64,000 bases of DNA, taken from Marsupella aquatica. Its lineage: Eukaryota > Plantae > Marchantiophyta. A model generated the notes under the pieces. That model made no database searches, was not told the DNA's origin, and saw nothing but the letters and a program-made list of their open reading frames with translations. Numbering within the stretch: position 1 is the stretch's first letter; each line of letters opens with the position of its first letter. The translations under genes were made by a program, and so were the position numbers. Below, in pieces: positions 37,901 through 62,584 of the stretch. The stretch is from contig OZ316898.1 of assembly GCA_973895155.1 (NCBI GenBank), positions 2,331,927 through 2,395,926 of the forward strand. The letters are read 5' to 3'.

Positions 37901-39534
37901 AATAGTTCTTGCAATTTTCTCTTCCTAGTACTAAGGGCACACACTTTCTGAGTTTGTAATGCCAACAACCATCTCTCTTTTCTTCTCTTGACATTGAGAC
38001 CATGCATCTGTGTGGTCAACTCTGGACGTGTCAAGTAGCGTGCATTCAAACCACCCTCTGTGCTTCTTTCCCCTCTCTTTGCTAAAGCCTCCGCTTCCCT
38101 GTGCACCCGTCCACGAAAGTCATCTTCTAGTGTTATAGCATGACATCTACTGCAAGTTAAGTTCAGAAACCCCCCACCATACAAGGACAGCCTACAACAC
38201 TGTTTATGCCTAAATAGTCCTTCTATATGTACAATAGAATTTGTATTAGGATTGTAGACATCAACAGAGACTGTGGCATTTACATCCCATACATGTCCTC
38301 CATGCTGATCCTGTAAGATACCCTTCACAGCATACTTCACATTCTTCCACTCTACATATTCATCCCATATTCCCCAACAGAGCAAACTTAGGCCCATATC
38401 AATGTCTACAGACCCACCTGTGCCAGAGCTGCTGCTTGCATTGGAAGCATCCTCCTTGAAGAATTTTAAAATTGAATTCTGTGAAGGATGTTGATCCCTC
38501 TCATCTGGCTTCCTTGGTCTGCCCCTCTTTCCAGATCTCAATGCAAGTTCAGCAGTATTCTCTCTGGCTTCAACTACATCCAGGTGACCCCGACTGACCA
38601 AGTGTGTCCTCAGGTTGTGATCCAAAGTCCCCTTTTTACAAACCAGATCCATGATTGCCCCACAAACCTTACACCTGACCTTATACAGGAACCACTTGTT
38701 TGCATTATTGGCTAAACCAGGCACAGGGGGCACATGAAATAGCTCATCATCACCTCCACACTCAGCATTCAAATTCTGTACTATCTCTAGGCCAGTTGCT
38801 ATGGCCCCCTCATAATCAAACTCAGGCTTTTGTGCAAGATCTGAGGGCTTCACTCCAATCATAGCAATTCCCCTTCTCCTACAGTAATTGTCTTTGTGTT
38901 TAGCAAAGGCAAGGTGCTTGGTCTTAAAATTGCTAAACAGATTAGCAATTGACTTCTTATCTTGGGAATTGTCTGCCCTCCCATAGATAACTCTGCACTC
39001 AAGACACTCTAAATGGCCTCTCACATCCTGTCCTTCATCCCATGTACGAATTCTCCAATTATGATTTTTATAACCATTCTTTTGAACCCACTTCTCTAGT
39101 CTTATAAATTCATCATTCCAAACTTTGACACCTGCCTTAGACATAAGAATAGACTCAAAAGAAGCTCTCACAGGGGGAGCTTCTTGCAGTTGTTCACCTT
39201 GGGAAGAGTCCACTACAACTGATTGGGTGACAGCAACAGAAACCGATGGGAACTCTGTCCCAACAGTCGGCAAGGATCCAATTTGTTCAATGACAGCAAC
39301 TTTCCCATCCAATTCAGACAGCTCAGTCATTTTCTCACTCTTGACCTTCATTCGACTAGGAAGCCTATAATCCCAGAAATCAAAATCAAAATCAACCAAA
39401 TCAGGAATTCGATTTCGAAAATCAGCTAAAGTTTGACCTTCTTTGAACACCAACACAGCTATTGGTTCTTCATCTTTCCCATCAGTCACCACATCCCTTT
39501 TTTTGTGCAATAGTTTTACAAACTGGGTAGCCAT
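34955..39534 (-). CDS. P-element-like DDE transposase, 2 exons (39534-37478, 37358-34955), ~1486 aa, intact
   Basis: GT-AG intron 37477-37359 joins in frame (KESPR|WEAKYD). Motifs are PSLKTLKR, LAEDETRI..LIGFCG, HASDGD, DQPHNGKKL (DxxH) and SDCCEIFFS. The N-terminus has two CxxC..H..H fingers and the AT-hook KRGRPRK. Confidence 0.8.
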
Positions 39535-39759
39535 TTCAATGAATTGGTTCAAGTAGGTTAAAGTATCAAGGGTTCTAAATACATTCACAGATACATAATG
39601 GACCTGCCATACACAATGAACCTGTCATACAACACAGTAAACAACACAATATGAAGCAAATTAGACATTGTTCAAAAAACCTTTTCAAAACCAGCTTTTA
39701 AGAAGACCCAAACAAAAACTTGCTGGTCATTGTTCACATGTGATTAGTCTAGTGAAACT

Positions 39760-40425
39760 CTAAGAAGTATGAGGCTGCACAGGAACTAGTTCACCCTCAG
39801 CTATTCTATGCCTATGACAATAAATGAAACGCCAGCCTTCCACATCCCAGTGGTCCCTGCCCTTCACACACCTCCTAAGGTGTTTCACTCCCCCAGTTGT
39901 CTCATCATGACACCAACTTCGAGGGCACCTACGACACTGGACAAAGTGCTTAATCCCATCCTTGTACACTTTACAATACTCACAAAAGTGCCTTGGGCAC
40001 ATTAGGCTCTTTGGATTCCCTGGCTGAGACCTTTGAGACAGTGCTGCAACCATAAGCAACACCCTAAGGCAACCAGGGTGGTAATGAGAAAAGCAATCGG
40101 GGTGGGCACAATGGAGCACAAGAGATTCATTTTCTGTGGGGTGCTCAAATCTGCCAATGAGTCCACAAGCAAAGCATCTAGCTTTGCCAGCAGCACATAG
40201 TTGACAAACCCATGGTGCCGTCCAGTCATTGTTTTCAGGCAGTGTGACAGGAGTGCAAGCAGGCCCATGTATACCTTCTCCACCAACAAAGTGAAAATGT
40301 CTACTACAAGGCCCATCACAAAATACCACATCATCTGTCTCATCACAAAAGAAACAACAAGGAGGATCCATGCGGTGGTGCTCCTTGTGGGAAAATATGT
40401 CAATCCTGGGCACATTAGAAGCCAT
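39760..40425 (-). CDS. Stand-alone EDM2-like composite PHD-finger protein (cargo of the P-like element)
   Basis: CFFCDE..VFCDGPCSRHFH..CQLC..RCFAC..CAHPDC..YHPGC..CPRHFCEYC..CRRCPRSW..W..IYCHRHRI..P..H follows the EDM2 PHD skeleton; intronless. Confidence 0.75.
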   Translation of the reverse strand: MASNVPRIDIFSHKEHHRMDPPCCFFCDETDDVVFCDGPCSRHFHFVGGEGIHGPACTPVTLPENNDWTAPWVCQLCAAGKARCFACGLIGRFEHPTENESLVLHCAHPDCFSHYHPGCLRVLLMVAALSQRSQPGNPKSLMCPRHFCEYCKVYKDGIKHFVQCRRCPRSWCHDETTGGVKHLRRCVKGRDHWDVEGWRFIYCHRHRIAEGELVPVQPHTS

Positions 40426-41994
40426 CTCTGCTTGTTGGATAAGTTGCTGGATAGTGGATTTACCTATGCACACCACATTCATTTACTCAGCATCCATGTT
40501 GTAGCCCCTCAACATTCATTAAACACTAAATAGCCAATTGAGGTTATTGGTGCAACTACATAGCATATATCATAAACAAAAGCATACCTTTTATTGATCT
40601 CTTATTTGACTAGCAAGAGCTGCAACAAATGGTGTATCTTGAGGCTTGCTCCTTCCACAAGGTTCACATATAAACCCTGGTATATTGCTGAAGCTTCTGA
40701 GATGCTTTGACTACATCGTAAGCCAATCCATCCTGCAAGAAGCTCAAGCCAATAAATCCCGCAAGCTCGAGTCAAGATCTAGAATAACAATTAAATCCAA
40801 GAAGACCTAACACAAAAGATGCTTCGACTACATCGTAATTAAGCCAATCCATCTGCAAGAAGCTTGAGCCAATCAATCCTGCTAGAGTGAAGATCTATAA
40901 TAACACATCCAAGAAGACCAAACACCAAAGATACAAGGAAGCGGGCAGGGAAGAACTTGAACAAACAGTAATCTTGAGAACTCTGGAAAATAGCGGCATG
41001 ACATGGAAGTCTCACTATAGATCATGAAATGAACTTTCAATTCAACTTCAGCCAGAGCTAGGCCAGAGATAATATACCTTGGCAATTATTGGCTCCAAGC
41101 TATAGACGTGGAACAAATCCTCTTGTTGGATAAGCTGCACATTCAACATAGAGCCATTCAAATGAATGGTATTCAAGATTGCATTGAACAAATACCACTA
41201 TGAACAATCACTGTTGAACAACTTACAGTGAGACTAATCCAATCAATTAATCAGGATTGAAACAGGAGTTGTTGAGGACGCTACTATGGCAAGGGCGCCT
41301 GCAATCCTACTTGCAAGAAGTAAAACACATAAGATAGACTAATCAGGCATGCAAAATCTCCAAGCAAAGAAAAATGTGAAATTGGCAATGGAGTCGATCC
41401 CACTGACATTTTCTCACAATCAGTTCCCTTCCAGCATTTTCAATCCAAATCTCATAGACAAACTGCAGGGAACTCAGAAGTGGACCATTGAGATAGACTA
41501 CAACATTTTCTACCACAGACTACAACAGACAATCGGGCTGACATTGAAAGGACAACATTTTCTACCACAGACTACAATAGACAGTCGAGCTGACATTGAA
41601 AGGACCATGAGACAACTTTCAAAGTTGACACACACAAACAAGACCTGCCCTTACCTTCACCAAGAGCCAACATGCAAGCGCAAATAGAGAACTAAGGACC
41701 AAATGTGATCGACTGTGAAGTTGACAATCAGTTCCTTCACCATTTTTGGGCATGAGACAGAGACAACTTTCACCAGCATCAGCGCAGTATGACAAACGGT
41801 GCCCCCAACAAAGCTTGATCTACCAAGTAATCAAATCACAATGAATCAAAGGAAGCAATTGAAAACTAGCAGGACAATGAAAGAGAACTCCACCACAAGT
41901 ACTTGCAGATCGAATGACAGTGCATCCTACCAAGGTCAATCAGCTCCCTGGTGCCCGGTCCAATCTCAACATGTACAGTCTTGATCGATCGATT

Positions 41995-42980
41995 GACCTT
42001 CAGCTTGATTGATCAATCAGTTGCTCCAACACGGCCGCTACACCAAAGACGACCCTTCAGTTGGATAGATCAGCTAGGAGCTCAAACACAACCGCAGCAC
42101 CCAACGACGACCCTTCAGCTTGATATTTCAGCTGGTTGCTCAAACACAACCGCAGCACCCAGTGGCAACCTTCACCGCAGCACCCAGCAGGACAGCCGCA
42201 GCCGTGACCTTGATCACACTCAGTCGCAACGCCCACGTTCATGCAATTGACTTCAGCCCCAACTTCAGCTACACCTCGATCATAGTTGCAATGCCCAGCT
42301 GAGCGCCCAACTTGAAGCAACATCCACAATTGCCCGATCACTTTCACTCCCAGAATGACTGCAGCTGATCAAAATCGCAGTAGATCACGCTTGCAGCTGA
42401 ACAGACTTGCAGCTGAATAGACTCGCAGCTGCCACCTAAGTTTGATCAACAGAGCCACAATGCCCATCCCATGTGTAAGCATTTCCTTCAAAAAAGCTCG
42501 AAGCAATACCCAGAAATGCCCACCGTGTGCAGCAAGCTCAGTCATTGCCGCAGCACCCAACCTGAGTCTAAGCATTTCCTTCAAGAAAAGATCAAGACCC
42601 TGAGTGCAAACTTTGTCCACTATCTACGAAGGAAGCAACACGATTGAGGAAACAACATGATTGAAGGCAGCAGCTTGCACAAGCAGCTTAAAACGAAGGA
42701 AGCATCACGATTGAAGGGAGCAACTCAATTGAAGGGAGCAGCACGAAAAGCAGGGAAGCACTCGACAAACAAAAAGGGATCAAGGAGGTCAGCCAAGAGG
42801 AAAAGTTCAAAGAAAGGGAGGAATACCTCAGTCTTCAGTTCGACCTGTGGAGTCACGCTTTCGCCCTTCGCCTTCAAGCTTGCCCCGGGCCTTCAAGCTT
42901 GCCCCGACCTTCAAGCTTGCCCCAACGTTCAACTTGCCTTCAATCTCGCCCCTCTCCCTTTGCCTTCAAGCTCGCTCTCT
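41995..42980. repeat. Short tandem repeats in the GC-rich 5' region of the P-like element
   Basis: ~55-60-bp units 'ccttcag.ttg..tg..cag...gctc.aacac' x3 (41995-42170) and ~18-bp 'ccttcaagcttgcccc' x3-5 (42870-42975). Confidence 0.7.
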
Positions 42981-45473
42981 GCCTAGCCTTTTCCAAGTGC
43001 TCCGTAAGGGATCGCAGCACATTGATTGGGAGAACCTCAATCTCCCGAGTTGCCAAAGCCTCCCACTTAGTCGACCTCAATGAGCGCCCACCTCCTTCAA
43101 CTGACCTTGCGCAACCACTGTCACCTCACATCCACCAACCTCAACGCAAGCTTGTGCAGCAGTCAATCGAACTCTCGTTCTAGCTCGCAACTTCCTTCAC
43201 AGAATGCACTACTTTCCTTAAAAAAAAACAGAGGCAGCACCCAACCTTCGATGCGCAACTCATCGCGACTCATCTTGTGCACTCTCGTGTGCACTTCCCT
43301 TTGCAAAGCTAAACCCTACCTCCCATCCAACGGTCCAACATTTGCCCTAAACGGCTCATATTTGCCTTTGCCCTGATCGTTGGATGCCCCTCCAAATGGA
43401 TGGATAGATGGCCCTGCGAGATTCACCCCCTAAACACCCACAGCCATCTACAAAGAATTTGGCAGTTGCACCTGGGAGAATGGATGTCCCCGACACTTCC
43501 TACCCCAACCCTTCCCCTTCCCCCCTTGTGGTCCACCAAACCATCCACGTCCCGCCCAAAAAATTCAAATTTTGTCCCTTAGTGCTCGTCTTAAGGCCAC
43601 CATGAAACCCCCATTAAGCACTATAACCTGTTTACATAAGGATGGGCCACATGGACCAATTAAAAACAGACACGTGTTCCTCATATATGGCCAGGCCAAA
43701 AATTCCCTATCTTCAACTAACAACTTATATTGAAGAAGTGGTGTTTATAATACCCCTAATATTCTTCTAAGTTGCAAGATATATTTTTTAACCCCTATAG
43801 TTCTTCAACAAAAATTCTAAAGTCTTCCGCAAAATTGAATTAAAAAACCCTATACTTTTTCGCGCGTGATGGGTCGGAAGGAAATAAGTGAGGACCCCGG
43901 GGAAGCTGGATCTGAAAAGGGAGAGCTCCGTTCTCCACTCCCATGACCGAGTCAGAGAGGATAGGCCGAAGGTCCACAATGAAACGTGACGCCAAGGCGG
44001 GGGCCACCTGCGTCCAGTTGCCAAGAAACGCACAAGGAGCAGCAACCACAGCCGAGGACACCCCCAAACCACCTCCCGATGGGGGCAGAGACGCCTGCCT
44101 AGCCGCAAAAGAACCATCCTCTCCATCAAGGGCTCCAGGACCGATGAGGTGACCAAAGACCCGCATCACGGTGGTGTCAAAGGAAGAGAGCAAGGACAAA
44201 AACGCTGGGGTGGGGGGGACCGTCCGCAGAAGGTATGATGGTCGGCGAACAAAACACAAAACCAGAATCAAGAAGGCAATCTGGACATCCCCCAAAGCCA
44301 CCAGCTGGTCAAGGTGCGCAACATCCTGGTCCAAGGCAGACTGTAGAAACTCCTGCTCAAAGGCCGTCCCCCCAAATGGCACCCCAAGGACACTAGTAGA
44401 AAACAATGTATTTTATGACCAAAACAATGACTATTAATCAGGTCTTTTTAACAAAACAATGACGCAATTGTTCTCGTCTTTCCAGACACGTCACAACGGA
44501 CATTTTGGTCACGGTCCTTTTGGACAAATGACGCTAAAAACATGTGGTCATTTCATACTATCCTAAATGACCGTTTTTATGATATGGTCATAAATGTTGA
44601 ACGGTCCAAAATGACGACACAAATCACCATCGACGGTCAATTGCCGTTGACCGTCGATGGTCCCCGTACCCAATCACACAACGACACGTGGCAATAAAAA
44701 AACTAATAACATTGGTCATTTTGGACAGTCCAAAATGACGTACATTATATAACAAATCAAATAGTGACACGTGGTTCAAAGAGGATTCACCATTTGGCAA
44801 TATATTTGGGTCATTTTGGACGTGTCCAAAATGACTACAGTATAAACAAGTCATATTGAGACACGTGGTTCAATTGGGAGAAGACACGTAAAGATACACA
44901 TTAGTCATTAATGACATGTCTTGAATGACATAAAGTGAGTCATAGTGGACTTGTTTATAATGACCATGAGAAAGGTCATTGTATATGTCATTCTTTGAAT
45001 CATTTAGTCTATGTCTTTAATGACCAGAGTTGAGTCATATTGGTCACAAAGATAGTTGTGAATAATGACCATTACATCAGTCATTCTAGCTAGTCATTTA
45101 GTCATTCAAGCCAATCATTCAGACGAAGTATTCAATGATTTGGAGAAATTCAAATTTAAGTGATCATGATAGATAAAACTTGATGTCAATCAAAAATCAT
45201 ATATTACAAAGCCATTCAATAGAGTTGCTAAATGAAAACTTAAAGAAACATTCGATATATATCACAAATCCAATTGATATTCATACAAGATACCTTCATA
45301 AGTCTCACGGTAAATATTGAACTCAATGCAAATTTATGAAACAAAATTACATTGACATCAATAATATTAGATTGTCAATTGTTACAACCTGACATACCAA
45401 TCACTCTGCATGTTTATAGAAAAACAGAGTTGTCATTCTATCATGTCTATTGTTTCTTGATAGAGTGCTATTT

Positions 45474-48320
45474 CTATTGCTTCTTAAGCAATCTAGAGTT
45501 CCATAGGGCATTCATCCCTTTCACATCAGATAATTTAGACTGGTTCTCCCCTGAATTGGCAAATGGCAATGCCACATCTACAAACACTTCAATCACACGC
45601 ACTCGCAAGAAAGGGCTTTCAAAATCTGCACAATGAAACTTATCTTCTCCTGGCAGCCCTGTCACCTCACCTTCTGCCACTATCATGGAATTGTCCACAA
45701 CGCTCTTCATCTTCACCAAATCTCCTCTTGCAAACTGTGAACAACACATTTTGTTAAAAATGCAATAAACAGAAATTGAAAGATAGAAGAACACTCAAAT
45801 CAAACACACATTTACCTTTGCAACGGGGTTAGGAGACTGCATTGGTTTCTTCTGTGCAGGTGATGCATTTGCTGAGGATCCTTTCTTCCTTTTCTTCTTT
45901 CCCTTTCTAGTTGATGGAGTGTCATCCTGTTCACTTGGAATGGGAGTTTCTTTTGGCAACTCAGATGATTCTGGGGTTACATCTGGTGTCAACTGAGTCG
46001 ACTTATCCTCTGGCAACTGAAAGACATCTGAAATGGCTTCTTTGGGCAACTTAGATGGCAAAAGGTTCACTTCCAATTCAGTTTGCTTTAGAGTACTGTT
46101 AGCTGTGTCAGTTGGTCTTCCCTGCGACACAGGAGGCTCCCCTAAAGATGCTGTCATAAAACACACACAAAAGAAATGCATAAACAAACATGTATACACC
46201 AGCAACATATAATCACACTAAAAACATGCAAGAACATTATAAACATGCAATGACATATACACATCACAATAATTACATTGAATGGACAGTGTATACATGA
46301 TAGAGAATTTTACCTTCATTATCGCCTGAAAAAGTAAGAGATCGCTTTCTACTACCTTGTTTGGTAGTTGTAGTCAACTTACTGTGACTAGGCACAACTG
46401 TTGGAACTTGTGCATTACTGGGGTGATGTGCCATCCACGTAGTCATCATGTTTGTCAACTCCCTCACAGTGCCTTTCAACTCAGCGACATCCAATTTCAC
46501 AGCCCCAATGGCAGTGATCTCTTCTTTTGAATGTGGGGTCTGTAAATGAACCACAAACCAACACAACAGTCTCACTGTCAAACTTACAAACGACACAACA
46601 CTGGCTCTGTCAAATGGAGAATGATGTACAAATCAAATTGGTATGACAATACTCACAGCTGATCCATGTCTGTTTCCTTGCCCTAGTAAGCTAGCACTTT
46701 TACCCTCCCCACTTGCCAATGATGGGCTCACCTTTGCTCCCACAAAACTACCAGTCTGACCTTCTGCACTTGCCAATGATGGGCTCATTGTCACCTTTGG
46801 CAATGAACCCTGACTACCATGGTTTTCTTTCAGGTCAGATATACCTGGGCTTGATCCTCTCTTCTGCTTCTGTTCAAACACACAATGAATGAGAAATCAC
46901 AGAGTTTGTTTTCATCAAGATTCACAAACAAGACAGAATTGATAGTGAAAATGATAGACAATTTACCATTCTCTTTGCTGCTGCAGCATGCCCTCCCCTT
47001 CCAAAGTGAGAGGTATCTTGCACTCGTGCTCTTTTATCAGTCATCTGTTTACTCAAAGATATCAATGCTGGACTGGTAAAATGAGATACCAAAGCTGCCC
47101 ATTTCTTTGGATCAACACCAGATGGCCCAAGTTTGGTTGGATCCTCATTGCAAACTTTCTTCCAATAAACATGCATTTTATGGCGCTCTCTCTTCAATAT
47201 GCCACGACAATGACTCTGGAATTTGGTGTTAATAAATTCCCCACCCACATACTCCCACTCAGCTGCCATGTTATTCCACACTGTGGTTGTATGAACTTGT
47301 GGATGATCAGTCCATTTTGGCTTTGATACATCAAAGACTCTGAGTACGTTGCCACGAAGTTCCTCCAGCCAGTATTGTTTGTTGCCATCAGAATCATCAA
47401 TATCATTGTCATAAATCTGCATTTCATAGACAATGTCAGATCATAACTCTGGAATTTATGCAGAGTCCAGGTTTTATACACACAACAACAGAGAGGATCA
47501 GATTTGTCTAAATCTACAAACAAGTACAATACTCACTTTAATGTGTTTGGGCACCTCTCCGCAATCCCTTCGTTGTTTGGCAGTATTATCAAACTGCTTC
47601 TTAGCATGCCTTCGTTCCCTGCGCATCTCAGAGGCCCCTCCTGCAATGCACACACATGCATTCAATCAAAAAATATGTACATGATTGAAAAGTTGAGCAA
47701 ATGTACTTGCATATGCAACACGAGCAGATTGTGTATTACCTGAAGATCCTCTGGAATGTAGTACATCAGATTGACCTGATCTGCCTTCAGATGCTGATGG
47801 AACCACTAAACAAACACACAACACCAAAGCACTTCAATTAATTTCATTTCCAAGTAGAATATCAACTTCCAAACACACCTGAAAAGTAGAACAGTACAAT
47901 CCACTCACTTTCATATAAGAGTCCAGTGTCTGGGTCTTTCCAACATCTCACTAGCCCACCTCCACCAGGCCCAGTCTTCTTAGGACCACAATTTTGTTTC
48001 TGTACCTACATCATGGACAACGTAAGCATATCAACATATAATTTGAAAAAGGGACAAGGATCCCTTCCTATTAGGATGATGAAGTTCAAGCATTACCTGT
48101 TGTGCACTCTCTGGTTCTGACCCTCCAATGTCAGAATCCTCAGTGTCATACTCAGAAGGAGAACCATAGCCATCATCACCAAACTCTGCCATGTTCACCT
48201 TGGTAACTTCTGATAGTCTAGAGCTCCTCCTCTTTGGCAATGTTTCAGTTGAAGTACCTTTCACCAAAGCAGGCTTTCCTCTCTCTCGTTGTACATGTGT
48301 GGTTGGGCCTCTAAGGAACA
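45474..48320 (-). CDS. CACTA TnpA-like protein, multi-exon (exon structure approximate)
   Basis: Exon fragments include WAALVSHF..SHFGRGGH (PTTA/Transposase_24-like), a coiled-coil exon, and the C-terminal IVAEGEV..RVRVIEV..DVALPF..ALWNSRLL (Tnp1/En/Spm-like). Confidence 0.7.
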
Positions 48321-48739
48321 AAGCAATCATCAACATACACCAATGCAGATCAAACATACATGCAAAATGAATCTACAACACCATAACACTAGTACTTATG
48401 TACAGGATCCATACTAGTATGAGACCAATCTGGAATATGAAAACAGAACATGAACCTGACAACTCCATCTACTGAATCAAATTTGCAATAGACATATCAA
48501 CACACACATCAGCTTGCAGTCTGGCCCCAGTCCTAGATCACGCATAATTCTGACATTATGCTCTATGTTCCGATTTCGGGCCTCCTCATAAGGATTCACA
48601 GAATGTGACAACCCTTGCAATCTTCCTTTCACAGGCTGCATTCACCAACTGCACAAATGGATAAACCATTAGTCTGATTTCATAAATAGTCCATACATGT
48701 AGTCCATCTATGGACTTCACACACCTAGCTAAAACCTAT

Positions 48740-51700
48740 TCACTGCTTAGGCCTGCCCTTTCTTGCAGATCCCTCTGCATCTCTGCCTCGTTTGGGACCA
48801 GTACTTGGTCCTGGATTTTCTCTGGACCTACAGGCCTTAGCCAATTCGATGTGTAATTTGACATTGTTTTCCATTGTAGCATGGAAATCAACGTCTGTGT
48901 AATCACCTAACACCCTTGTGGACCTGGATTCTTTGTGGAGGATTGTTCTCCATGCTATCCCCTTCTCATTGGGGTGGAAGAAAACCTGCTCCACTTGCTT
49001 TGGGAAAACGTAATCCATTTTCTTGGACACACCCAGTTCTCTATGGAAATTCACCTGCCAAAGACCAGACTTGGTATACCTCATACTGGCAGAGGATTTA
49101 GGAGTCCATGATGGATCTGCCCATTTCCCTTTGAAAAGAATCACCTCTTTCCTCAAGCTGCCATAATTCAGTACCAAGATATCTGTCAAGGCCCCTACAT
49201 ACTGTACAGATTCTTCTATGGTTGCACCAGACCTGTCCACTCGCTTCTCAGTGAATGTAGAAGCCATCCCAGAATCAAAAGTGCTGAAAGCACCAGAATC
49301 ACAATCACTCAAACACCCCAAGGATGGAATAGTCCTCCAATGGTGCCCATAGGCTCTACATGCCCTATACAGTCGTGCCTTCAAACTAGGTGGTGTGGAG
49401 TATGCAGATAGTAATGACCGCTCAGACTCTTTCTCAAAATTATGGGTATTGACTAATGTTTGAAACCATTCCCTGAAAGGTGGCAATTCTTGGCAGTCTA
49501 CGGGAAATTCCACTGGTTTTCTTCGATTGGCAGGCTTCCTCATCCACTCCTTCCGGAAATCCACTCTTCGTTTGGTAACAGTCTCATTGGTAGCATCATA
49601 TATCCTGCATGGCAACAACAACACTGAAGACATTAGTGCACGATCCACCATGAATATACAAACACAATGGGGAAACATAATTATGATCCATATGCCTAAG
49701 GATAGGAGAGTTTCTAGGGTTTATGTACCTATACCATGGAGCCACTGTCTCTTCATTCTCTAATATATAATGATGCATGGCCATCATTTCAGACCAATCC
49801 AAAGTTATCGCCTTTGCAGCCCCTTCCAAAACAATGCCTGCAACGCCAGCATCCTCCTCCAACTCCCAGGTTCGTTTTCCCTCTCCCTTTGCATCAATCA
49901 TGTATTCAGAAAGAAATCCCAAAGACTCATCTAATACATAGCCTTCAGCCATAGAAGCCTCTGGACGTGCCTTGTTTCGTACATAACCCTTCAATACCTT
50001 CAGGTTCCTCTCTATTGGGTACATCCATCTGCCTGTAACTGGGCCACACAAGTCTAATTCCTCCACTAGGTGAATCATTAAATGGGTCATGACATCAAAG
50101 AAGCTTGGTGGAAAATGGATTTCCAAAATGCAGAGAGTGAATGCAACATCCATCATCAAATTCTCATACATTGAAGGGTCCCACACCTTCGTACAGATCT
50201 GGCGATAGATATTGCTCACCCCAGCTATGGCCAAGCGAACCCCTTCATCAAGTAATCCCATTGTTGCCAGAGGGAGAATCTGTTGCATGAGTTGGTGGAA
50301 ATCATGTGATTTCAACCCAGAGAGTTTCTTGGATTTTGTAACACACTTTGCCAAAGAACTTGAAAAACCAGTGGGCCCTTTCAAGGTCAATAAAACCTCC
50401 AAGAACCTTGTTCTTTCCTTCTTGCTCAAGCAATATGGGGCTGGGGGCATCAACAATTTGTCATCCTTACGCTTGGGAGCTGGATTGGGTACAAGCCATA
50501 GGTGTTGGCGCACCTGTAAGAGCTTCATGTCTTCTCTCACAGAAGGAGTGTCCTTGGTCCCAATGATAGTGTGCACAATGTTGTGTGCAAGATTCTTCTC
50601 ACAGTGCATGGGATCTAGACAATGGTTAATGAGTAGTTTCTGCAGTGGACACACAATTCAGAAATTAGGGCATTGAATACAACTTTTGGCATCACTGGGC
50701 AGTAGTTTGTGCAGTGGACACAATTCAGAAATTAGTGCATTGAATACAACAATTACAAAATCTGGGCTACAGGAAGTATATGAAGAGAATATATTTCAAA
50801 GTCATATGAAGAGATTGCAGAAATTCATTGTAGTAGTATGGAGTCTTACATTCCAATAGGGCAACTTGTACAGACCAGTAGCCCTCTTCACTCCATGCAC
50901 CTTTATGGGGCATTTCTCATCCTCAACCTTGGTTCCTCCCTTCTTCAAATATTCTGTTGTCTCGTCTCCCCACTTCTTTCTATCAGAGCTTGTCATTCTA
51001 CACGGTGCAGGTCGACTCTCAATTGCACCATCAAAGTATTGTGCACTATCTGGTCTACGAAAAAGATGCCTTGTTGCTAACCATCGACGGTGGCCACTGT
51101 ACTCTAATTTCTGCAAGTGCTTAGAACCACGTGCCACACATTCTGGCCCACAGATGACACATCCTTTGTATCCAGAGTGTTGTTGTCCAGATATTAAACC
51201 ATATGCAGGGTAATCATTGATTGTCCACAATAGCACAGCCCTAAGGTTGAAGTGTTGAGACAATCCTGGGCGTGGCAATTTGTCAAAGCAGGGCACTCCT
51301 TTCTTCCACAACAGCTCCAACTCCTCATAGAATGGGCCCAATATTATGTCTAGCTGTTCCTCTGTTACTGAATCAGGTCCTGGAATCAGCATAGCTAGCA
51401 TGACAAAGAACTTCTTGGTGGTAAGCCAAGGAGGTAAATTGTAATTCAACAACAGTATTGGCCAGGTAGACCAAGCTGTGGAATTATTCCCAAAGGGATT
51501 CACCCCATCAAGTGCCAACCCAAATCGCACATTCCTTGGTTCAGCTGCAAATTCCCGATCAATATTTGTATCCACATGCTTCCAAGCCTTTGAATCTGCT
51601 GCGTGCCGAACCATGTTGTCTGTGCTTCTATTCTCATGATGCCAAGTCATGAGTTTAGATGTACCAGCAGTGGCATACAATCTCTTCAACCTGGGAATTA

Positions 51701-52733
51701 TAGGGAAATACCGCACTACCTTCCTTGCCTGTAATGAATTCCCCACTCTCTTCATCTTGGGCTGCTGACACACTGAACAGTTTTCTAACTTGGCATTCTC
51801 ACCCCTAAAGAGCATACAACCTTTCTCACAGACAGGGATTCTCTCATAATCCAAGCCAAGCTTTCTCAATAGCTGCTTTGCAGCATATAAGTTCTTGGGC
51901 AGATTATGCTCTGTAGGCATACCATGCTCCCCCATCAAAGACAACAATGCATTCACTCCTTTGTTTGAGAATCCATGGCCATGACAGATGTTCAGCAGAA
52001 GCAACATGAATGACACAACATCTATTTTGCTGCCTGGGAACAAAGGTTGCATTGCTGCATCTAAAGATAACTGTGCAGGATCAGTCTCCACAGGAGTTTT
52101 GGAGGTTTCAAGGGGGTTTACAGGATGGGCACCTCCTTCACTCTCATCATCCCCAAGTACAAAATCCAAGTCAAAACGGTCCTGATCATCTAGCTCATGC
52201 TCAGGGGATTCTTCACTGGTTCTCAGCAACGTTTCTTCCAGTAGAGCCCTGATATGTTCTTCGACATCTATAGTTGGATGTTCTTGAACATCCACAGTTG
52301 GATACTCTGGAACATCCACAGTTGGATACTCTGGAACATCTACAAATAAATGTTCTTCAACATCTACAGTTGGCTGTTGTGCACAGGTTGCCTGCTGAAG
52401 GTTTGCTACCCTCAATGCCTCAGGGCCATGTTGTGACATGTAGTCAGCACCCCACTCTTCATCAGAAGAGTCCTGTCCCTCTCCCACCCACACTCGACAT
52501 GCAGGGTACCGACCATGTTTAATAAGGTGCAGTCTAGCAGTATTCCGATTAGTCCTATAATTCCCTTTGCAGTTCACACAAGGGCAGTACATCTTATGGT
52601 CCCCACTCTTGTGGCAGGCCTTCTGTTCTCGAACCCACAAAGCATCATCACGATGTTGTACTCTAGCTGGATGGAAGAGCGGCAACTTTGGAGTTCTACC
52701 CACACCTAACGTATTCTGTGGCAATTGTGCCAT
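48740..52733 (-). CDS. CACTA TnpD/Tnp2 transposase, 3 exons (52733-50850, 50639-49729, 49604-48740), ~1219 aa, intact
   Basis: Motifs CPCVNC, LALDGVNPF, NYNLPP, LIPGP, WTINDYPAY, DPMHCEKN, GLKSHDFH, FPPSFFDVMTHL..GPV..RWMYPIER and RPEASMAEGY. The GT-AG junctions keep frame (3660 nt). Confidence 0.95.
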
Positions 52734-53330
52734 GCTAGCTTGATTGAAATTGTATTCAAACTATGATTTTCAAACTGAATCAGAGTGACATGCATACAAA
52801 ATTGGGCCTACCGTCACAGTTGTACAACCGATGCCAACCACAGTCCAATTGCTCAAACCCACAGAGCCCAGTTTCTCAAATCCACTGTAGTAGGGCACCT
52901 TCTCCTTGCATACAAATAGAGCATCACATACAGTGTCATCAGAATGATACTATGAACGTAAATCTCTGTGCCTTCATCATTTCCAGTATTTGTTTGCCTA
53001 TTAGGAATGTGAGCAGACAGGTCTGGAATAAGTAACGTTTGTGACACCAGTGACAAATTTACAAGTGAAGTTTAGACATCAATATGGAGGAAAGTCACAC
53101 TCAAAGTACATGCTTGAAAATCAGAATCCTACCCTGGAAAAGATAATAAAGTTGATTTCTCAAAATTAATTGCCTCAATCCGCAATGCACTGTCGTAGAG
53201 TGTGTATACATGAGGAGTTCATCAAACTGCATATAAATAGTCCACATGTTTTAGCACTCTGAAAATTGTTTAAGTCCACGTGAAACCATCAAAAAGCTCT
53301 ATCTCAAGTTTGTGTTCGATCCAGCCTCAA

Positions 53331-53990
53331 TCAAATCCAAGATATGTGGCTCCTAGCAGGAGTGCCTAGTGTAGGGTCAATGTCATGGTCAGGACAGTAA
53401 AACATCCCCTTCTTGGGCTGCCCATGCGCTGAGTGATCCCAAATTGTTCGATCATGGGCAAATCCCCTCTGCTGGATAAACAGCAGGCAGTCTTTGTGCC
53501 ATGCCTTAGGACACCTCATGCACTGAACCAAAAAGCCATTAGCCCCATCATTGGGCCCCTGTCCACAAGTAAGACAAATATGGAGTCCACATGATGCTGT
53601 GCCAGGAACCAAACACTGCCGACAGTAAAACCGGGCACAGAGAGAGTCTGGACATTTTCTTACCTCTTCACCAATTTTTCCAGACACATGGCACTTAAAG
53701 CAAGAATGTTCCTCATTCTTGCAATCAACACAAAGCCATTCTCCAACATGGCCATCAGTGAGGGATATAGTTGGGCATAGCCATTGCTGACCCAAAGGAC
53801 AGGAAACATTCTTATGGAAATGTCGGTGGCAAGGCCCATCACAAACAATGAGATCCCCTCCCTCATCACAAATCGCACATACATGTGGACTATTCTGGTT
53901 AATCTCAATGTCTGAATATAAGGACAATTGAGGTGCTTGAGAGGATTCACCTCTGCAACGATTCATGGCCTTCTGCTTATTGCGAGCCAT
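53331..53990 (-). CDS. Stand-alone EDM2-like composite PHD-finger protein (cargo of the CACTA element)
   Basis: CAICDEGGDLIVCDGPCHRHFH..CVDC..HSCFKC..CGLHICLTC..CMRCPKAWHKDCL..IWD..FYCPDHDIDPTLGTPARSH, including the EDM2-type terminal YCxxHxIDxxLxTPxRxH motif; intronless. Confidence 0.85.
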   Translation of the reverse strand: MARNKQKAMNRCRGESSQAPQLSLYSDIEINQNSPHVCAICDEGGDLIVCDGPCHRHFHKNVSCPLGQQWLCPTISLTDGHVGEWLCVDCKNEEHSCFKCHVSGKIGEEVRKCPDSLCARFYCRQCLVPGTASCGLHICLTCGQGPNDGANGFLVQCMRCPKAWHKDCLLFIQQRGFAHDRTIWDHSAHGQPKKGMFYCPDHDIDPTLGTPARSHISWI

Positions 53991-56360
53991 GGTCCTGCAC
54001 ACTCAGACCCTACATCAGATTGTGAAACAAGAAGGAATAACAGGGTGCAGTATGACACAAAAGAATGAGGGTGCAGCATAAAATATGACATGTAACCACA
54101 AGGGTGCAACATAAACCAATGCTTTATAGATGGCAAAGCATTTAGGACTGAGCAGCGCAAATAACCTTGGCCTAGATGATTGGAAGCAATCACAAATATT
54201 GCAACCTGTATGCCTTTGCTTGCTGTACAGCAGTGCTCACTCACCCTGCCTTTTTAAAATCTGTAAGGGCAACACAGAAAAAATAGCAATTGAGTTTCAG
54301 CAAAGCATTCATTTGGCTCTCAAGTTTTAAAATGGACAGAGCAAACACAACAATGTGCACAACAAAGCACAGAGAGCAACAAAACTCCAGCAAACTGGGA
54401 CTCAGGCAAGAGATACGAATTTTAGCAGCGAAATCAAATCAAGATTCGGACCTGTGAGTTCAACATGCAGTGCTCACTCACCCTGCCCTTTTTTAAATCT
54501 GTAAAAATCAAGTTTTATTGTGTGCCTTCTACATCTTAAGCTGCTGCACACATCTGTTACAGAACCATAAGTTGCTTTACTCTCAACAAGCTGCTGGTCC
54601 ACCCACTTTTTCAAAAGCTGCACCGTACTCTATCTTCGTGCACAAATGACTATACCGGGCTGCTGTCAGAGACCCTTACGAAGGATTTAAAATTGACCAA
54701 GCTGATTTTAGTTTAGTTTTGTCCAGTTTGCAGACCAAAGGAAATCATGTGGCTGTATTCATGGAGTTGTATTCATTGCTGTGTATGGATGTTGTGTGAA
54801 CATCAGACAGTTAGCTGTAAATTACCATAGTTGAAGAGCAAGGCTTGTACAAAAGCCACTAAGGAATTCTCTGAGGTGGCACAGCAGTTGGCAAACCACA
54901 CACGAAACTCTGAAACTTTTTGGCGACAAAATTCTACAGAGTCGCTGCTGGAATCAAGTGAGGATTCACCATACATGCTTGCACTTCTCTTCAGTAAAAA
55001 AAAGAGAAAAGAAAAGGGCTATGATACAGAGGGATGTCAAAAGAAGAGTAAGGAAACCAATTCATTGAGGAACATAGACAGACTAAGGAAAACATCATAC
55101 AATGGAAAACTAAGGACTACATTGTAATAATAAGAGATCAAGCTCACCTTGCACCACAAACATTGTCAGACGACAACAAGACAACAAACTGAATTGAACA
55201 TAGCAGACAAATCCAACAAGTAGCAATCAGAAATCAACAGCAGACAGACAAAGGACAACTTGGTCAGAACTCGGGCACTTGATTCAGTTGTGGTAAATAG
55301 CTGTTCAGGTTCTGGACAAGCAAGAGCAATACGTGAGCAGACTCCAGAAAAATCATCTCTTGAGATTGAGGAGAAAGGCATTTCCCAGCCAGCTTACTTA
55401 TGTCTTGAAAAATGTATCGGACATCGTGGACGCTGGGCCTCAGCTGCTGGCCGCAAGGGAAGATTTTGCCAAAACAAACAATAAAGCTCGAAGATAGTTA
55501 AATTTCTTAGGTCTTTCTAAATGGGGACTGAATTAGCAATTAGAACCAGTAAACCCTGATCTTGGGCAGGCAGAGAGAGAAGAGTCCGCGCCTAATACTT
55601 ATGTCTACCCGAATTTTACTGGGACATATGAGCATTGGGATGCCATTGCAAAGCAGAATTTTGTAGCAGTGGAAGGAATCAACATAGATAGCAGTGGAAG
55701 GTCGCAGTGGAGCTAGCATGGTACAGGGAAGGAAATGCAGGCATTGTGCGAGAAAGTGCAATGGCTAGTTCTATGGGATTTCCTTCTCCAATCCATGACA
55801 GTGCCGACGACACGCACAACTGCTACAATCAGTGCGCGTCCAGGATGCTCCATCGCATCACGTCAGGGAACTCAACATTCTAGACATTCGAAAACTGCAT
55901 TCACATTTCTCTGCAAAGGGAACTCAACATTGTAGACATTCAAAAACTGGTGCAAAACTCAGGCACTTAGAGAGAGAGGGACAGAGAGAGAGCGAGAAAG
56001 AGAGAGCAAATAGTCTCTTAGCAATCGGAGCTTCTCTGTCATTGCCATAAGCATACTAGCAGACACTAAGCAACAGAACAAGAAGGCAACATTGGATTCA
56101 TGGACTGACAGCACATTGGTAGCACATTGGCAAAAGCAAAGCAAAAATGCAGAATGAACAAATGGCCAGAAGGGGAAGAAGCGCAAAATTGCACAACTGA
56201 CCTTCTCGCACCTCAGCCCAAACTCGCTCCCACAGATATAAGTTCTCGCAGCTCCTTGATGGAACCTCCTGTAGGTTCTCGCCGATTGCAACTCCTCACC
56301 CACAGCTTCTTGCCGATTGTAGCTTGCTGCTGATTGCAACTCGTCGCTGATTTGCAGCTC

Positions 56361-56591
56361 GTCCTCCGCTCCTCACCCGCAGCTTATCGCCGATTGTAGG
56401 TCGTCCTCCGCTCCTCGCCCGCAGCTTATCGCTGATTGTAGGTCGTCCTCCGCTCCTCGCCCGCAGCTTATCGCCGATTGTAGGTCGTCCTCCGCTCCTC
56501 GCCCGCAGCTTATCGCCGATTGCAGCTCATCCTCCGCTCCTCACCCGCAGCTTATCGCCGATTGCAGCTCATCCTCCGCTCCTCACCCGCA
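56361..56591. repeat. 42-bp CpG-rich tandem repeat, ~5.5 copies, inside CACTA
   Basis: 'cagcttatcgc' at 56380, 56422, 56464, 56506 and 56548. Confidence 0.92.
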
Positions 56592-57899
56592 ACAATGACA
56601 AATGTAAAGAAGCTATTGCCTTGACCCTGCAATCGGGCACTCCAAAGCCCGAATGTCCTCCAAAGCGCAGGGTCCTCCAAAGAAGCTCCCAAGTCCTACC
56701 GAGGTGCTCCGCCGACCGCGCGCAACAAGCTCAAAAACAATTGTAGCCTGAATGGCTTCGGGTCGGAGCTCCTCCTCTAAACCTTGCAAATGGTCACTAA
56801 AACAATGCCACGTCCAACGCTTCACTCAAACAATGCCTCACCCAATGCTTGCCCGAACAATGCCTCGCCCAACGCTTCGAAGGGTGTCGAAGCTTGGTGG
56901 AATGGAGCACAACGCTGCGCAACCCTAAGCCCTTGCAATGTGCACACAAAGGCATGCCAAGAAATGAGCACATCGAGCGTTGCCCTCTCGATGTTTTTTC
57001 AGGAAAAAGGGCTCCTGTTGGTACGCAAGAACACTTAGCGGGAAAAACCTAATGCTAGACCCCTAAAGCCCGTAAAGGTAAGGTATTCTGTTGGATGGGG
57101 ATGGTGGATATTGTGGGTCATTAATTAGGGTTATATTCTGACAATATCTCTCACATGTCTGGACCCCCCATAAGGCCCTAGGGAAGTTGAGACTAGGTTA
57201 ATAACAATGTAAACCCCCCCCCCATAAGGCCCTAGGGAAATACCAACTATAGAGGTTAATAACAAGGTCCGGACGCCCCCATAAGGCCCTAAGTAGGGAA
57301 GGCAAGGTTAATAACTCATAATGTCACGACCCCCCCCATAAGGTCATGGCTGTTTGTGTAGGTGCCAACAAGAATGTTAAGGACCAATGTTATATATAAA
57401 AAATGATGCTAGCGATATAAAAGGTCCGATATATGCCCGCGATATAAACCCATAACCCGCATGCATGAACACCATTTTGGACTACCTTATTGTCTCACCA
57501 TATGATAGTGATACTCATCCAAATATTAGCATTTAATAGCTCTCCACTCCTGACTCAATTGAGAGAAACCCTCATTCATGACTCAAGCACAATTATAGGG
57601 TCCCTTACATGCTACATGACCACTACATATGAGGCTATGTTGTGTAAGAGTTTTTGAGAGCATTACACCAAAGCATTAATAAGTGAGCCTTCCCATGACT
57701 ATATGACCTCCAATATGCCAACATTAATGGCTTCCAATATGACAGCGTGAGTGACCCCACGTTTAGTCCTCAGATTGAAGCACCATTTAATTCACAAATG
57801 ACCCAATGAACTCCCTTGTACCTCCAAAGAGAACCCCCCAATAGCCTTTGTAAAGACCACATTTCCAGTCATTTGGTACTTCTGACCTCTAGTATGACA

Positions 57900-62520: not shown

Positions 62521-62584
62521 TACAATTATGATAGGTGTCTGGAATGACTATTGAGTATTTTAATCTTCATATCTCTTGGGTTCT

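What the first reader, a model, noticed from the sequence alone, without database searches (positions are those of the whole stretch)
39760..53990. Two unrelated DNA transposons each carry a stand-alone EDM2-like PHD gene directly upstream of the transposase: candidate TE-encoded heterochromatin-reader system
Seen: the P-like element (39760-40425) and the CACTA element (53331-53990) each encode an intact, intronless ~220-aa multi-PHD protein lying 5' of, and co-oriented with, the transposase. The two proteins share the Cys/His skeleton and a few motifs (CDGPCxRHFH, CxRCP, YCxxH) but differ strongly otherwise, so they are not a recent local copy. Established: Arabidopsis EDM2 reads H3K9me2-containing marks through this composite PHD and, with ASI1 and AIPP1, allows full-length transcripts through intragenic heterochromatin (e.g. 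the NLR RPP7). TE-encoded anti-silencing proteins are known (VANC of VANDAL). Inference: these are captured reader-only modules, lacking the other EDM2 domains and kept intact by TE-level selection. They could act as anti-silencing or read-through factors, decoys of the host complex, or adaptors steering insertion into heterochromatin. I do not know of a description of such cargo in two superfamilies.
Basis: partly seen in the sequence, partly recalled or inferred. Interest (0 to 1): 0.92.

Follow-up and report, generated by a model that had tools for sequence, protein, structure and literature searches.

The report
Two transposons carrying histone-reader genes
Two unrelated cut-and-paste transposons lying side by side in this liverwort-type plant genome each carry, just ahead of the transposase gene, a small intact gene that encodes only the histone-tail-reading PHD module of the plant EDM2 family. 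Selection has kept this gene, so these mobile elements seem to bring their own chromatin reader, but what it does is untested.

Summary
ORF 53331-53990(-) lies inside a 19.1-kb CACTA element (44391-63494, CACTA inverted ends, 3-bp target duplication GGA). ORF 39760-40425(-) lies inside a 9.5-kb element (34370-43901, 8-bp duplication GAAGCTGG). The modelled transposase of the second element matches only the Drosophila P-element transposase among solved structures.

Both ORFs encode about 220 residues that consist only of an NSD/EDM2-type triple PHD module. They are 27% identical to each other.

The CACTA gene is old cargo under selection. Four diverged relatives (83, 71, 43 and 41% protein identity) keep an intact ORF of the same size, and three of them have contigs long enough to show the transposase following it. 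dN/dS is 0.11-0.18, and the stop codon is conserved.

The P-type gene has one intact relative (55% identity, dN much lower than dS). Six other relatives of that transposase lack it, so it is specific to one sub-lineage.

In trees, both transposon clades group with short liverwort host proteins (Mp1g03210 and Mp4g03050 type) inside the EDM2 family. One origin or two cannot be told apart.

Expression, splicing and histone binding are untested, because no RNA runs were found. The role proposed here, a chromatin adaptor or an anti-silencing factor, is inference.

I found no paper describing this. This scan has already noted the CACTA cassette many times, and the P-type case twice, elsewhere in the same genome.

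The parts
44391..63494 (-). CACTA (EnSpm) transposon, 19,104 bp. Genes lie on the minus strand.
   Evidence: Inverted ends CACTAGTAGAAAAC... / ...GTTTTCTTCTAGTG (pair I10). They are flanked by GGA at 44388-44390 and at 63495-63497.
53331..53990 (-). PHD-only gene of the CACTA element (219 aa, triple PHD of EDM2/NSD type).
   Evidence: The AF2 model has pLDDT 80 and matches PZP and NSD tandem PHD folds. dN/dS is 0.11-0.18 against L001-L003.
50802..52733 (-). CACTA transposase, first long ORF (Transpos_assoc plus Transposase_21).
   Evidence: Pfam E 4.5e-66.
48740..50654 (-). Continuation of the CACTA transposase gene (ORFs with DUF4218 and DUF4216).
   Evidence: Pfam E 8.7e-36 and 3.1e-05.
57900..62320 (.). 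Array of about 580-bp tandem repeats, with palindromic cores, in the 5' part of the CACTA element.
   Evidence: Self-BLAST and inverted-repeat output.
34370..43901 (-). P-type transposon, 9,532 bp.
   Evidence: 8-bp duplication GAAGCTGG at 34362-34369 and 43902-43909. Ends are CTCGGGGGCCTCA / CCCGGGGTCCTCA. Removing the element restores the host LINE ORF.
39760..40425 (-). PHD-only gene of the P-type element (221 aa).
   Evidence: It is 55% identical to the stand-alone protein P0090, with dN 0.34-0.38 and dS saturated.
37459..39534 (-). P-type transposase, first coding block (zinc-finger-like motifs, AT-hook, ends at the EDET motif).
   Evidence: 55% identical to L004. The start Met-Ala-Thr is shared with L004.
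34955..37378 (-). P-type transposase, second coding block (rest of the catalytic core).
   Evidence: 80 homologues found. The AF2 model has pLDDT 78. The only significant PDB matches are 6p5a and 6pe2, the Drosophila P element transposase.
33391..34369 (-). Host LINE, 3' piece. The same old LINE copy was hit by both transposons.
   Evidence: The ORF becomes continuous with 43910-44390 once the P-type element is removed.
43910..44390 (-). Host LINE, middle piece lying between the two insertions. The two insertion points are 490 bp apart.
63498..63974 (-). Host LINE, reverse-transcriptase piece beyond the CACTA element.

Best explanation
SHOWN. Both ORFs are real protein-coding genes under selection, and each is part of the transposon that surrounds it. 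Each encodes a roughly 220-residue protein that is only an EDM2-family triple PHD module, a fold that binds the histone H3 tail in its solved relatives. In the CACTA lineage the gene is old, and it sits directly ahead of the transposase in the three of four deeply diverged relatives whose contigs are long enough to show it. In the P-type lineage it is confined to one sub-lineage.

INFERRED, the mechanism I commit to. The protein is made together with the transposase and works as the element's chromatin adaptor. It reads the modification state of H3 tails and so couples the transposition machinery to a particular kind of chromatin, most likely repeat or heterochromatin, which is a safe landing site. 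Precedents are the PHD finger of RAG2 for RAG1 and the chromodomain of chromoviral integrases.

The confidence below is for this whole statement. The shown part alone I hold at about 0.85, and the adaptor mechanism at about 0.35-0.4.
For: The genes lie inside verified element borders.

Selection on the CACTA gene:
- dN/dS is 0.11-0.18 at dS 0.6-1.4.
- The ORF length, the start and the C-terminal ...HISW(I/L)-stop are kept down to 41% identity.
- The order PHD then transposase is kept in L001/L002, L009 and L011, where the N-terminal 309 residues of the transposase are only 30% identical in L009.
- Contigs from four public runs show two synonymous changes and one replacement in the ORF and no indel there, while indels occur in the spacer.

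Selection on the P-type gene: against P0090, dN is 0.34-0.38 and dS exceeds 3.

Identity of the module: Pfam, PDB and fold matches. EDM2 family membership of the module.

For the adaptor reading specifically:
- Each gene is immediately upstream of, and in the same orientation as, its transposase.
- Distant members of the same P-type transposase family carry a Tudor reader fused to the transposase C-terminus (P0074 and P0075). This transposase family has therefore joined itself to chromatin readers more than once.
- Both PHD-carrying elements landed 490 bp apart in the same old LINE copy.
Against: There is no expression or splicing evidence, because no RNA run holds the stretch. No binding evidence exists. 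The complex prediction could not be run.

A free-standing adaptor would need a contact surface for two unrelated transposases, and nothing in the 220 residues beyond the PHD module suggests one.

Two insertions in one LINE is a sample of two. It could equally reflect the host tolerating insertions in repeats.

Six other relatives of the P-type transposase do without the gene, so it is not essential for transposition.

The third finger of the P-type protein has an altered ligand pattern.
Confidence: 0.4

Rival explanations
1. Anti-silencing or mark-masking factor acting in trans. The PHD-only protein occupies H3 tails on the element's own chromatin, or competes with host EDM2-family readers. 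This blunts heterochromatin feedback or allows full-length transcription through the long, repeat-rich element. It would work without touching the transposase.
For: - A function that does not depend on the transposase explains most simply why the same module sits in two unrelated superfamilies. The closest precedent is of this kind: TET/JBP genes in seven or more fungal transposon lineages, with transfers between them (PMC12730594).
- The module comes from the EDM2 family, whose Arabidopsis member binds H3K9me2 and controls transposon silencing and full-length transcripts (PMC7529245).
- A related CACTA element carries a BRCT gene beside the PHD gene (L011). Earlier scan notes report F-box genes as well. 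This looks like a kit for dealing with the host.
- Plant DNA transposons are known to encode anti-silencing proteins. VANC is cited in PMC13317346. En/Spm TnpA is from my own knowledge.
Against: A bare reader has no effector or catalytic part. Masking a histone mark across the genome needs high expression, and acting locally needs a way of being recruited. No expression data exist. The nearest host relatives are liverwort proteins of unknown function, not EDM2 itself.
Confidence: 0.3
2. The PHD ORF is not a separate gene. It is the first coding exon of the transposase gene, joined by splicing, so that the transposase itself carries an N-terminal PHD module.
For: - Same strand, with short spacers (about 225 nt and about 600 nt).
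- CACTA elements are known to produce several proteins from one transcription unit by alternative splicing (En/Spm, own knowledge).
- An earlier first-reader note describes a P-type transposase 'fused' to EDM2-type PHD fingers elsewhere in this genome (s1-771422, unchecked).
- Relatives of the P-type transposase carry a fused Tudor domain.
Against: - The protein's last residues and its stop codon are conserved in relatives down to 41% identity. That is not expected if the end of the ORF were intronic.
- The spacer carries several in-frame stop codons and indels among copies.
- The P-type transposase keeps its own conserved start, Met-Ala-Thr, shared with L004, which has no PHD gene.
- Stand-alone proteins of the same size recur in independent assemblies.
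Confidence: 0.12
3. Neutral, Pack-type capture of host gene fragments with no function for the elements.
For: DNA transposons, CACTA included, often pick up host gene pieces. In the P-type lineage the gene is missing from six other relatives.
Against: dN/dS is 0.11-0.18, with intact ORFs across dS up to 1.4 and beyond. Position, start and stop are conserved in at least four diverged CACTA lineages. The P-type gene shows dN far below dS against P0090. Each is a complete domain module, not a fragment.
Confidence: 0.04

Closest known systems
EDM2 (ENHANCED DOWNY MILDEW 2) and EDM2-like proteins of land plants
   Same: The triple PHD module is homologous. Named EDM2 proteins (Cryptomeria, Mangifera) match the profile of the transposon proteins at about 1e-30 over the whole module. 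The transposon clades nest inside the plant EDM2-like radiation.
   Different: The transposon proteins are 219-221 aa and carry only the PHD module. They have no RFD-like N-terminus (PF12047 is seen in P0111) and no ELP/methyltransferase-like or other EDM2 parts (domain list from PMC7529245). Their closest host kin are short liverwort paralogues, not the long EDM2-like Mp2g00350. Both have very long stem branches.
Liverwort host proteins Mp1g03210 (768 aa) and Mp4g03050 (280 aa), with orthologues in Riccia, Calypogeia and Marchantia paleacea
   Same: They form one well-supported clade (98/93) with both transposon PHD clades. Module identity is 27-35%.
   Different: These are host genes found in chromosome-scale assemblies. 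The long ones share an N-terminal 400-500 residues that the transposons lack. Their function is unknown, and no paper mentions them. Whether host or transposon was the donor is not resolved.
TET/JBP dioxygenase genes carried by many DNA-transposon superfamilies in fungi (Kojima 2025, PMC12730594)
   Same: One epigenetics-related host-type gene is carried as separate cargo by unrelated cut-and-paste superfamilies, EnSpm/CACTA among them. Transfer between transposon lineages has been inferred.
   Different: That cargo is an enzyme that removes a silencing mark. Here the cargo is a reader with no catalytic part. The hosts are fungi there and a liverwort-type plant here. P-type elements are not among the fungal carriers listed.
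RAG2-like protein of TransibSU/ProtoRAG transposons (PMC4411706)
   Same: A transposon encodes, beside its transposase, a second separate protein that contains a PHD finger.
   Different: RAG2 is a six-bladed propeller plus a single PHD finger, and it binds RAG1. The proteins here are a triple PHD module only, unrelated in sequence. Contact with a transposase is not shown.
VANC of VANDAL (Mutator-like) elements and TnpA of En/Spm
   Same: These are accessory proteins of plant DNA transposons that counteract epigenetic silencing. VANC is cited. TnpA is from my own knowledge.
   Different: They are sequence-specific DNA binders with no PHD module and no homology to these proteins. An anti-silencing activity of the PHD proteins is untested.
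Chromodomain of chromoviral (Ty3/Gypsy) integrases
   Same: A mobile element carries a histone-mark reader, thought to steer integration into heterochromatin (own knowledge).
   Different: Here it is a separate gene in DNA transposons.

Membership tests
EDM2/NSD-type composite PHD module | Three consecutive Cys/His zinc fingers matching PHD-1st_NSD, PHD_NSD and PHDvar_NSD. | tested here: met
   They are above the cut-off for PHD_NSD in both proteins and for PHDvar_NSD in the CACTA protein, and sub-threshold for PHD-1st_NSD. The zinc ligands are invariant across 27 sequences. In the P-type protein the third finger has an altered His/Cys pattern.
EDM2/NSD-type composite PHD module | The fold is a multi-PHD histone-tail-binding unit. 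| tested here: met
   The AF2 model has pLDDT 80.3. Foldseek matches NSD2/NSD3/NSD1 PHD5-C5HCH at probability 1.00 and TMt 0.55-0.65, and JADE1 PZP at E 1.9e-4 but with TM only about 0.2.
EDM2 protein (orthologue) | The other EDM2 domains are present: RFD-like N-terminus, ELP/N6-adenine-methyltransferase-like domain, PGR, Pro-rich tail. | tested here: not met
   The ORFs are 219-221 aa, and the PHD profile covers them end to end. So they share the EDM2-type module but are not EDM2.
EDM2 protein (orthologue) | Binds H3K9me2-containing H3 tails and acts with ASI1/AIPP1. | not testable with these tools
   This needs peptide arrays, ITC or co-IP.
CACTA / EnSpm superfamily | Inverted ends beginning CACTA, a 3-bp target duplication, and a TNP2 (Transposase_21) transposase. 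| tested here: met
P superfamily | 8-bp target-site duplication and short inverted ends. | tested here: met
   GAAGCTGG is duplicated. The 13-bp ends have 2 mismatches. The host LINE ORF is restored when the element is removed.
P superfamily | [quoted passage not shown] | tested here: met
   Foldseek gives only two significant PDB matches, 6p5a and 6pe2 (probability 1.00, E 1e-4, TMt 0.5, 373-430 columns). The conserved EDET, D..H..KK..N and SDCCE.FFS motifs are. There is no sequence-level Pfam or PDB match.
P superfamily | N-terminal THAP DNA-binding domain. | tested here: not met
   No Pfam match at E up to 0.1 in the 709-aa ORF. CxxC...H...H zinc-finger-like motifs and an AT-hook are seen instead. 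It is therefore a divergent, THAP-less P-type element.
Transposon-encoded anti-silencing factors (VANC type) | Homology to VANC, or a shown loss of methylation on the element's own copies. | not tested
   No VANC sequence was compared here, and Pfam finds only PHD families in these ORFs. The activity itself cannot be tested with these tools.

The most novel reading that the evidence does not exclude
A portable histone-reader gene, born from a liverwort EDM2-family paralogue, has been passed between unrelated DNA-transposon superfamilies (CACTA and P). Each keeps it because it lets the element read host chromatin for itself, either to pick heterochromatic landing sites or to evade silencing. 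This would be a plant counterpart of the TET/JBP cargo of fungal transposons and of RAG2 in the RAG transposon.
Probability: 0.3. Interest if true: 0.8.

Novelty: new variant of a known kind. Interest (0 to 1): 0.66.

Why it matters
Transposons are usually seen as targets of the host's chromatin marks. An element that encodes its own reader of those marks could choose where it lands or resist silencing.

Several things make this case attractive:
- It is under clear purifying selection.
- Near-identical copies of the stretch appear in public runs under three organism labels.
- It sits in two superfamilies with unrelated transposases. This allows a natural comparison: same reader, different enzymes.

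The case is directly testable in Marchantia-type systems, by peptide binding, ChIP or CUT&RUN, and insertion-site profiling with and without the gene. It may also show what the uncharacterised host paralogues (Mp1g03210 and Mp4g03050 type) do. It adds a plant example to the short list of chromatin or epigenetic cargo genes shared among DNA-transposon superfamilies.

Tried and rejected
- **Expression and splicing.** The run search found no RNA run holding the stretch. The four runs I laid were contigs of unknown library type. They showed a few isolated low-support joints, none with clear intron ends and none joining the PHD ORF to the transposase ORF. They cannot show transcripts.
There is no result either way.
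- **Word-index search with the P-type PHD protein** found nothing. The exhaustive profile search later found one relative, P0090. Its contig is only 1.16 kb, so its neighbours are unknown.
- **Metagenome scan** with the alignment of the P-type PHD protein and P0090 found no locus.
- **PHD gene upstream of other P-type transposases** (L004/L005, L006, L007, L012, L013-L019, L020): none by tblastn.
- **The 19-nt perfect inverted repeat** at 34705/40680 was considered as the element ends. I rejected it because it has no target duplication and lies inside the borders verified through the LINE. Its role is unexplained.
- **BRCT or Cys-rich accessory ORFs** in this window's two elements: none found.
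- **Sequence-level matches of the P-type transposase** to Pfam or the PDB: none. Only the fold comparison worked.
- **DNA for P0003** was not available.
- **The join across the putative short intron** between the two P-type transposase ORFs was not built or searched. The two blocks were treated separately, by reference.
- **Depth figures** were not used as copy numbers, as that tool warns against it.


Full report
**1. What is there**

Both match the Pfam families built on the N-terminal PHD fingers of NSD proteins:
- PHD_NSD at 35.7 and 30.3 bits, against a cut-off of 23.9.
- PHDvar_NSD at 31.1 bits, against a cut-off of 27, in the CACTA protein.
- Weaker PHD-1st_NSD matches in both.

The CACTA protein aligns to PHD1-3 of NSD3 in the PDB at E 2.4e-10.

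The two proteins are 27% identical over their whole length, E 9e-17. They share the Cys/His skeleton. They are homologous but old relatives, not a local copy.

**2. Both genes are inside transposons with verified borders**

The CACTA element runs from 44391 to 63494. It has inverted ends CACTAGTAGAAAAC... and the 3-bp duplication GGA on both sides. On the minus strand, downstream of the PHD gene, lie:
- a Transposase_21 ORF (E 4.5e-66);
- ORFs with DUF4218 and DUF4216.

Upstream of the PHD gene lies a 4.4-kb array of about 580-bp repeats.

The second element runs from 34370 to 43901. The 8-bp sequence GAAGCTGG flanks it on both sides, and the ends are imperfect inverted repeats (CTCGGGGGCCTCA / CCCGGGGTCCTCA).

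Both elements sit in one old LINE copy. If I remove the second element and one copy of its duplication, a 514-aa LINE ORF becomes continuous across the junction. This independently confirms the borders. The two insertion points are 490 bp apart.

**3. The second element is P-type**

Its two long ORFs (709 and 807 aa) have no Pfam or PDB sequence match. They are separated by about 80 nt that looks like a short intron. I did not build the join.

The 807-aa ORF has 80 homologues, many of them in the liverworts Riccia sorocarpa and R. fluitans. An alignment of 34 of them shows conserved EDET, D..H..KK..N and SDCCE.FFS motifs.

An AlphaFold model built on that alignment has pLDDT 78. Its only significant PDB matches are the two structures of the Drosophila P element transposase (6p5a and 6pe2; probability 1.00, TM about 0.5 normalised on the target, 373-430 columns).

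Taken with the 8-bp duplication, this supports a divergent P-type element without a THAP domain. The claim of two unrelated superfamilies therefore holds.

**4. The CACTA gene is conserved cargo under selection**

A word-index search found three stand-alone relatives of 213-225 aa, at 83, 71 and 53% identity. Their contigs are co-linear with the window. L001 continues through the spacer into the start of the transposase.

dN/dS against the window copy is 0.11-0.14 for L001 and 0.15-0.18 for L003, at dS 0.6-1.4.

The exhaustive profile search added more distant stand-alone relatives:
- P0084 (43% identical) is followed on its contig by a TNP2 homologue whose N-terminal 309 residues are only 30% identical to the window's.
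- P0088 (41% identical) lies on a 13-kb contig, followed by a BRCT ORF, Transposase_21 and DUF4218.

The ORF start, its length and the C-terminal ...HISW(I/L)-stop are kept throughout. This argues for a real stop codon and a stand-alone protein.

Contigs of four public runs, from three studies and three organism labels, cover the whole stretch at 90-100% likeness. One contig of 1,204 nt spans the PHD gene and its flanks. Relative to these contigs, the window's PHD ORF differs by two synonymous changes and one replacement (T78A). It has no indel, whereas indels occur in the spacer. None of these runs is on record as RNA.

**5. The P-type gene is specific to one sub-lineage**

It has one relative, P0090 (226 aa, 55% identical, stand-alone, on a 1.16-kb metagenome contig). 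The start is shared, dN is 0.34-0.38 and dS is saturated. The protein has therefore been under constraint for a long time.

None of the six other relatives of the transposase that I could read has a PHD module upstream. These are L004/L005 (55-63% identical transposase, 1.18 kb of upstream sequence), two Riccia loci, and L012, L013-L019 and L020, each with up to 10 kb of upstream sequence.

The P-type transposase keeps its own start (Met-Ala-Thr), shared with L004, which has no PHD gene.

Two distant members of the same transposase family (P0074 and P0075) carry a PTM/DIR17-type Tudor domain fused to the C-terminus. Association with chromatin readers has therefore arisen more than once in this family.

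**6. Where the module comes from**

The profile search gave 985 hits. The bulk are proteins of 1,000-1,400 aa with the module at about residues 220-440.
- Sampled members are named ENHANCED DOWNY MILDEW 2 (Cryptomeria, Mangifera) and carry the RFD-like N-terminus.
- The long Marchantia EDM2-like protein is Mp2g00350.

In a careful tree of 38 modules, three groups form one clade (98/93) nested among non-seed-plant EDM2-like proteins:
- the CACTA proteins (10 rows, support 97/100);
- the P-type pair (support 100/100);
- a set of short liverwort host proteins, namely Mp1g03210 (768 aa, module at the C-terminus), its Riccia, Calypogeia and M. paleacea counterparts, and Mp4g03050 (280 aa).

The larger quick tree agrees.

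Inside that clade nothing is resolved. Both transposon stems are very long, at 2.0 and 3.8 changes per site. An AU test does not reject a single transposon clade (p 0.45). One capture followed by exchange between superfamilies, and two separate captures, both remain possible.

The label 'EDM2-like' is right for the module. The immediate source, however, is more likely a liverwort-specific paralogue than EDM2 itself.

**7. Structure**

The model of the CACTA protein has pLDDT 80 and a disordered first 22 residues. Its best-scoring PDB matches are PHD-Zn-knuckle-PHD (PZP) domains (JADE1, AF10, PHF14), though at TM only about 0.2. It also matches the NSD PHD5-C5HCH tandem at probability 1.00. Both types were crystallised with H3 tail peptides. 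This supports a histone-tail reader but says nothing about which marks it reads.

**8. How it most likely works**

*Shown:* a transposon-borne, stand-alone, PHD-only gene under selection, in two superfamilies.

*Inferred:* the protein binds H3 tails.

Beyond that, two models are close.

I lean slightly to a chromatin adaptor for the transposition machinery (about 0.35-0.4), for these reasons:
- the gene is tightly placed ahead of each transposase;
- the P-type transposase family has also fused a Tudor reader to the enzyme itself;
- both PHD-carrying elements landed within 490 bp of each other in an old repeat.

Precedents are RAG2 (PMC4411706) and chromoviral chromodomains.

The rival is a trans-acting anti-silencing or mark-masking factor (about 0.3). 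It is favoured by the module's portability between unrelated transposases, as with TET/JBP in fungi (PMC12730594). It is also favoured by the module's EDM2 ancestry (PMC7529245) and by the BRCT and F-box neighbours seen in related CACTA elements.

A spliced PHD-transposase fusion (about 0.12) is disfavoured by the conserved stop codon and by the transposase's own start. It cannot be excluded without RNA data. Neutral capture is essentially excluded for the CACTA gene.

**9. Novelty**

Eight full-text searches and look-ups in a 2026 atlas of transposon products and a 2026 review of gene capture found no description of an EDM2-type PHD gene in any transposon.

The general kind is known: chromatin or epigenetic accessory genes of DNA transposons, sometimes shared among superfamilies. 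I therefore rate this a new variant of a known kind.

This scan had already found the CACTA cassette on many other pieces of the same genome, with follow-ups that reached the same conclusion. It had found a P-type element with a PHD gene twice. Those notes are not independent evidence. My tests of the CACTA conservation and of the P-type classification were done afresh here.

**10. Limits**

- There is no expression, splicing or binding evidence.
- The linkage test for the P-type gene rests on seven related lineages and on one relative whose context is unknown.
- The depth figures were not used as copy numbers.

Noticed in passing
window 53976-53990 (N-terminus of the CACTA PHD protein); P0001 and P0087: After removal of the first Met, the N-terminus of some CACTA PHD proteins resembles the histone H3 tail. 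P0001 begins ARTKQKAY, identical to H3 residues 1-5. The window copy begins ARNKQKAM, and P0087 begins ARPKKMAK. In a protein built of H3-tail-binding PHD fingers this could be a built-in pseudo-substrate or a self-association motif. It is not conserved in P0002 or P0003, and the region is disordered in the model.
   Followed up: partly
P0074 residues 1160-1217 and P0075 residues 1066-1119 (distant relatives of the P-type transposase): A PTM/DIR17-type Tudor domain is fused to the C-terminus of P-type transposases that are 31-33% identical to the window's. The window's transposase does not share it.
   Followed up: partly
window 34955-35600 (C-terminal 200 residues of the 807-aa transposase ORF): The model shows a confident beta-rich C-terminal domain (strands between residues 598 and 788) after a long disordered linker. 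It has no Pfam match, and I could not search it on its own. It might be another chromatin- or DNA-binding module.
   Followed up: no
L011 3497-4402: A related CACTA element carries a 301-aa ORF with weak BRCT matches between its PHD gene and its transposase. The window's CACTA element has no such ORF.
   Followed up: partly
window 34705-34723 and 40680-40698: A perfect 19-nt inverted repeat brackets the PHD gene plus the transposase inside the P-type element. It has no target duplication. It may be a subterminal binding site or a trace of an inner element. Unexplained.
   Followed up: partly
window 57900-62320: About 580-bp tandem repeats lie inside the CACTA element. Each has a palindrome of about 52 nt (TTTGGCAAATCACTCCAAAGTCGTACGACTTGGGAGTGATTT...).
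   Followed up: no
window 27986-32824 (+): An NB-ARC / LRR gene is followed by several repeated modules of about 150 aa, directly next to the transposon nest. Earlier notes describe similar NLRs just beyond the window.
   Followed up: no
window 48700-54100 laid on runs X1, X2, X3, X5: Contigs 95-100% alike to this CACTA stretch occur in runs filed under three different organism labels and three studies. The labels may be close or cryptic species sharing a young family, or the family may have moved between them.
   Followed up: no
L007 19693-21445: A Peptidase_C48 (Ulp1-like) gene lies near a P-type transposase locus in Riccia sorocarpa. Ulp1-like proteases are known cargo of plant transposons. 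I did not check whether this one belongs to the element.
   Followed up: no
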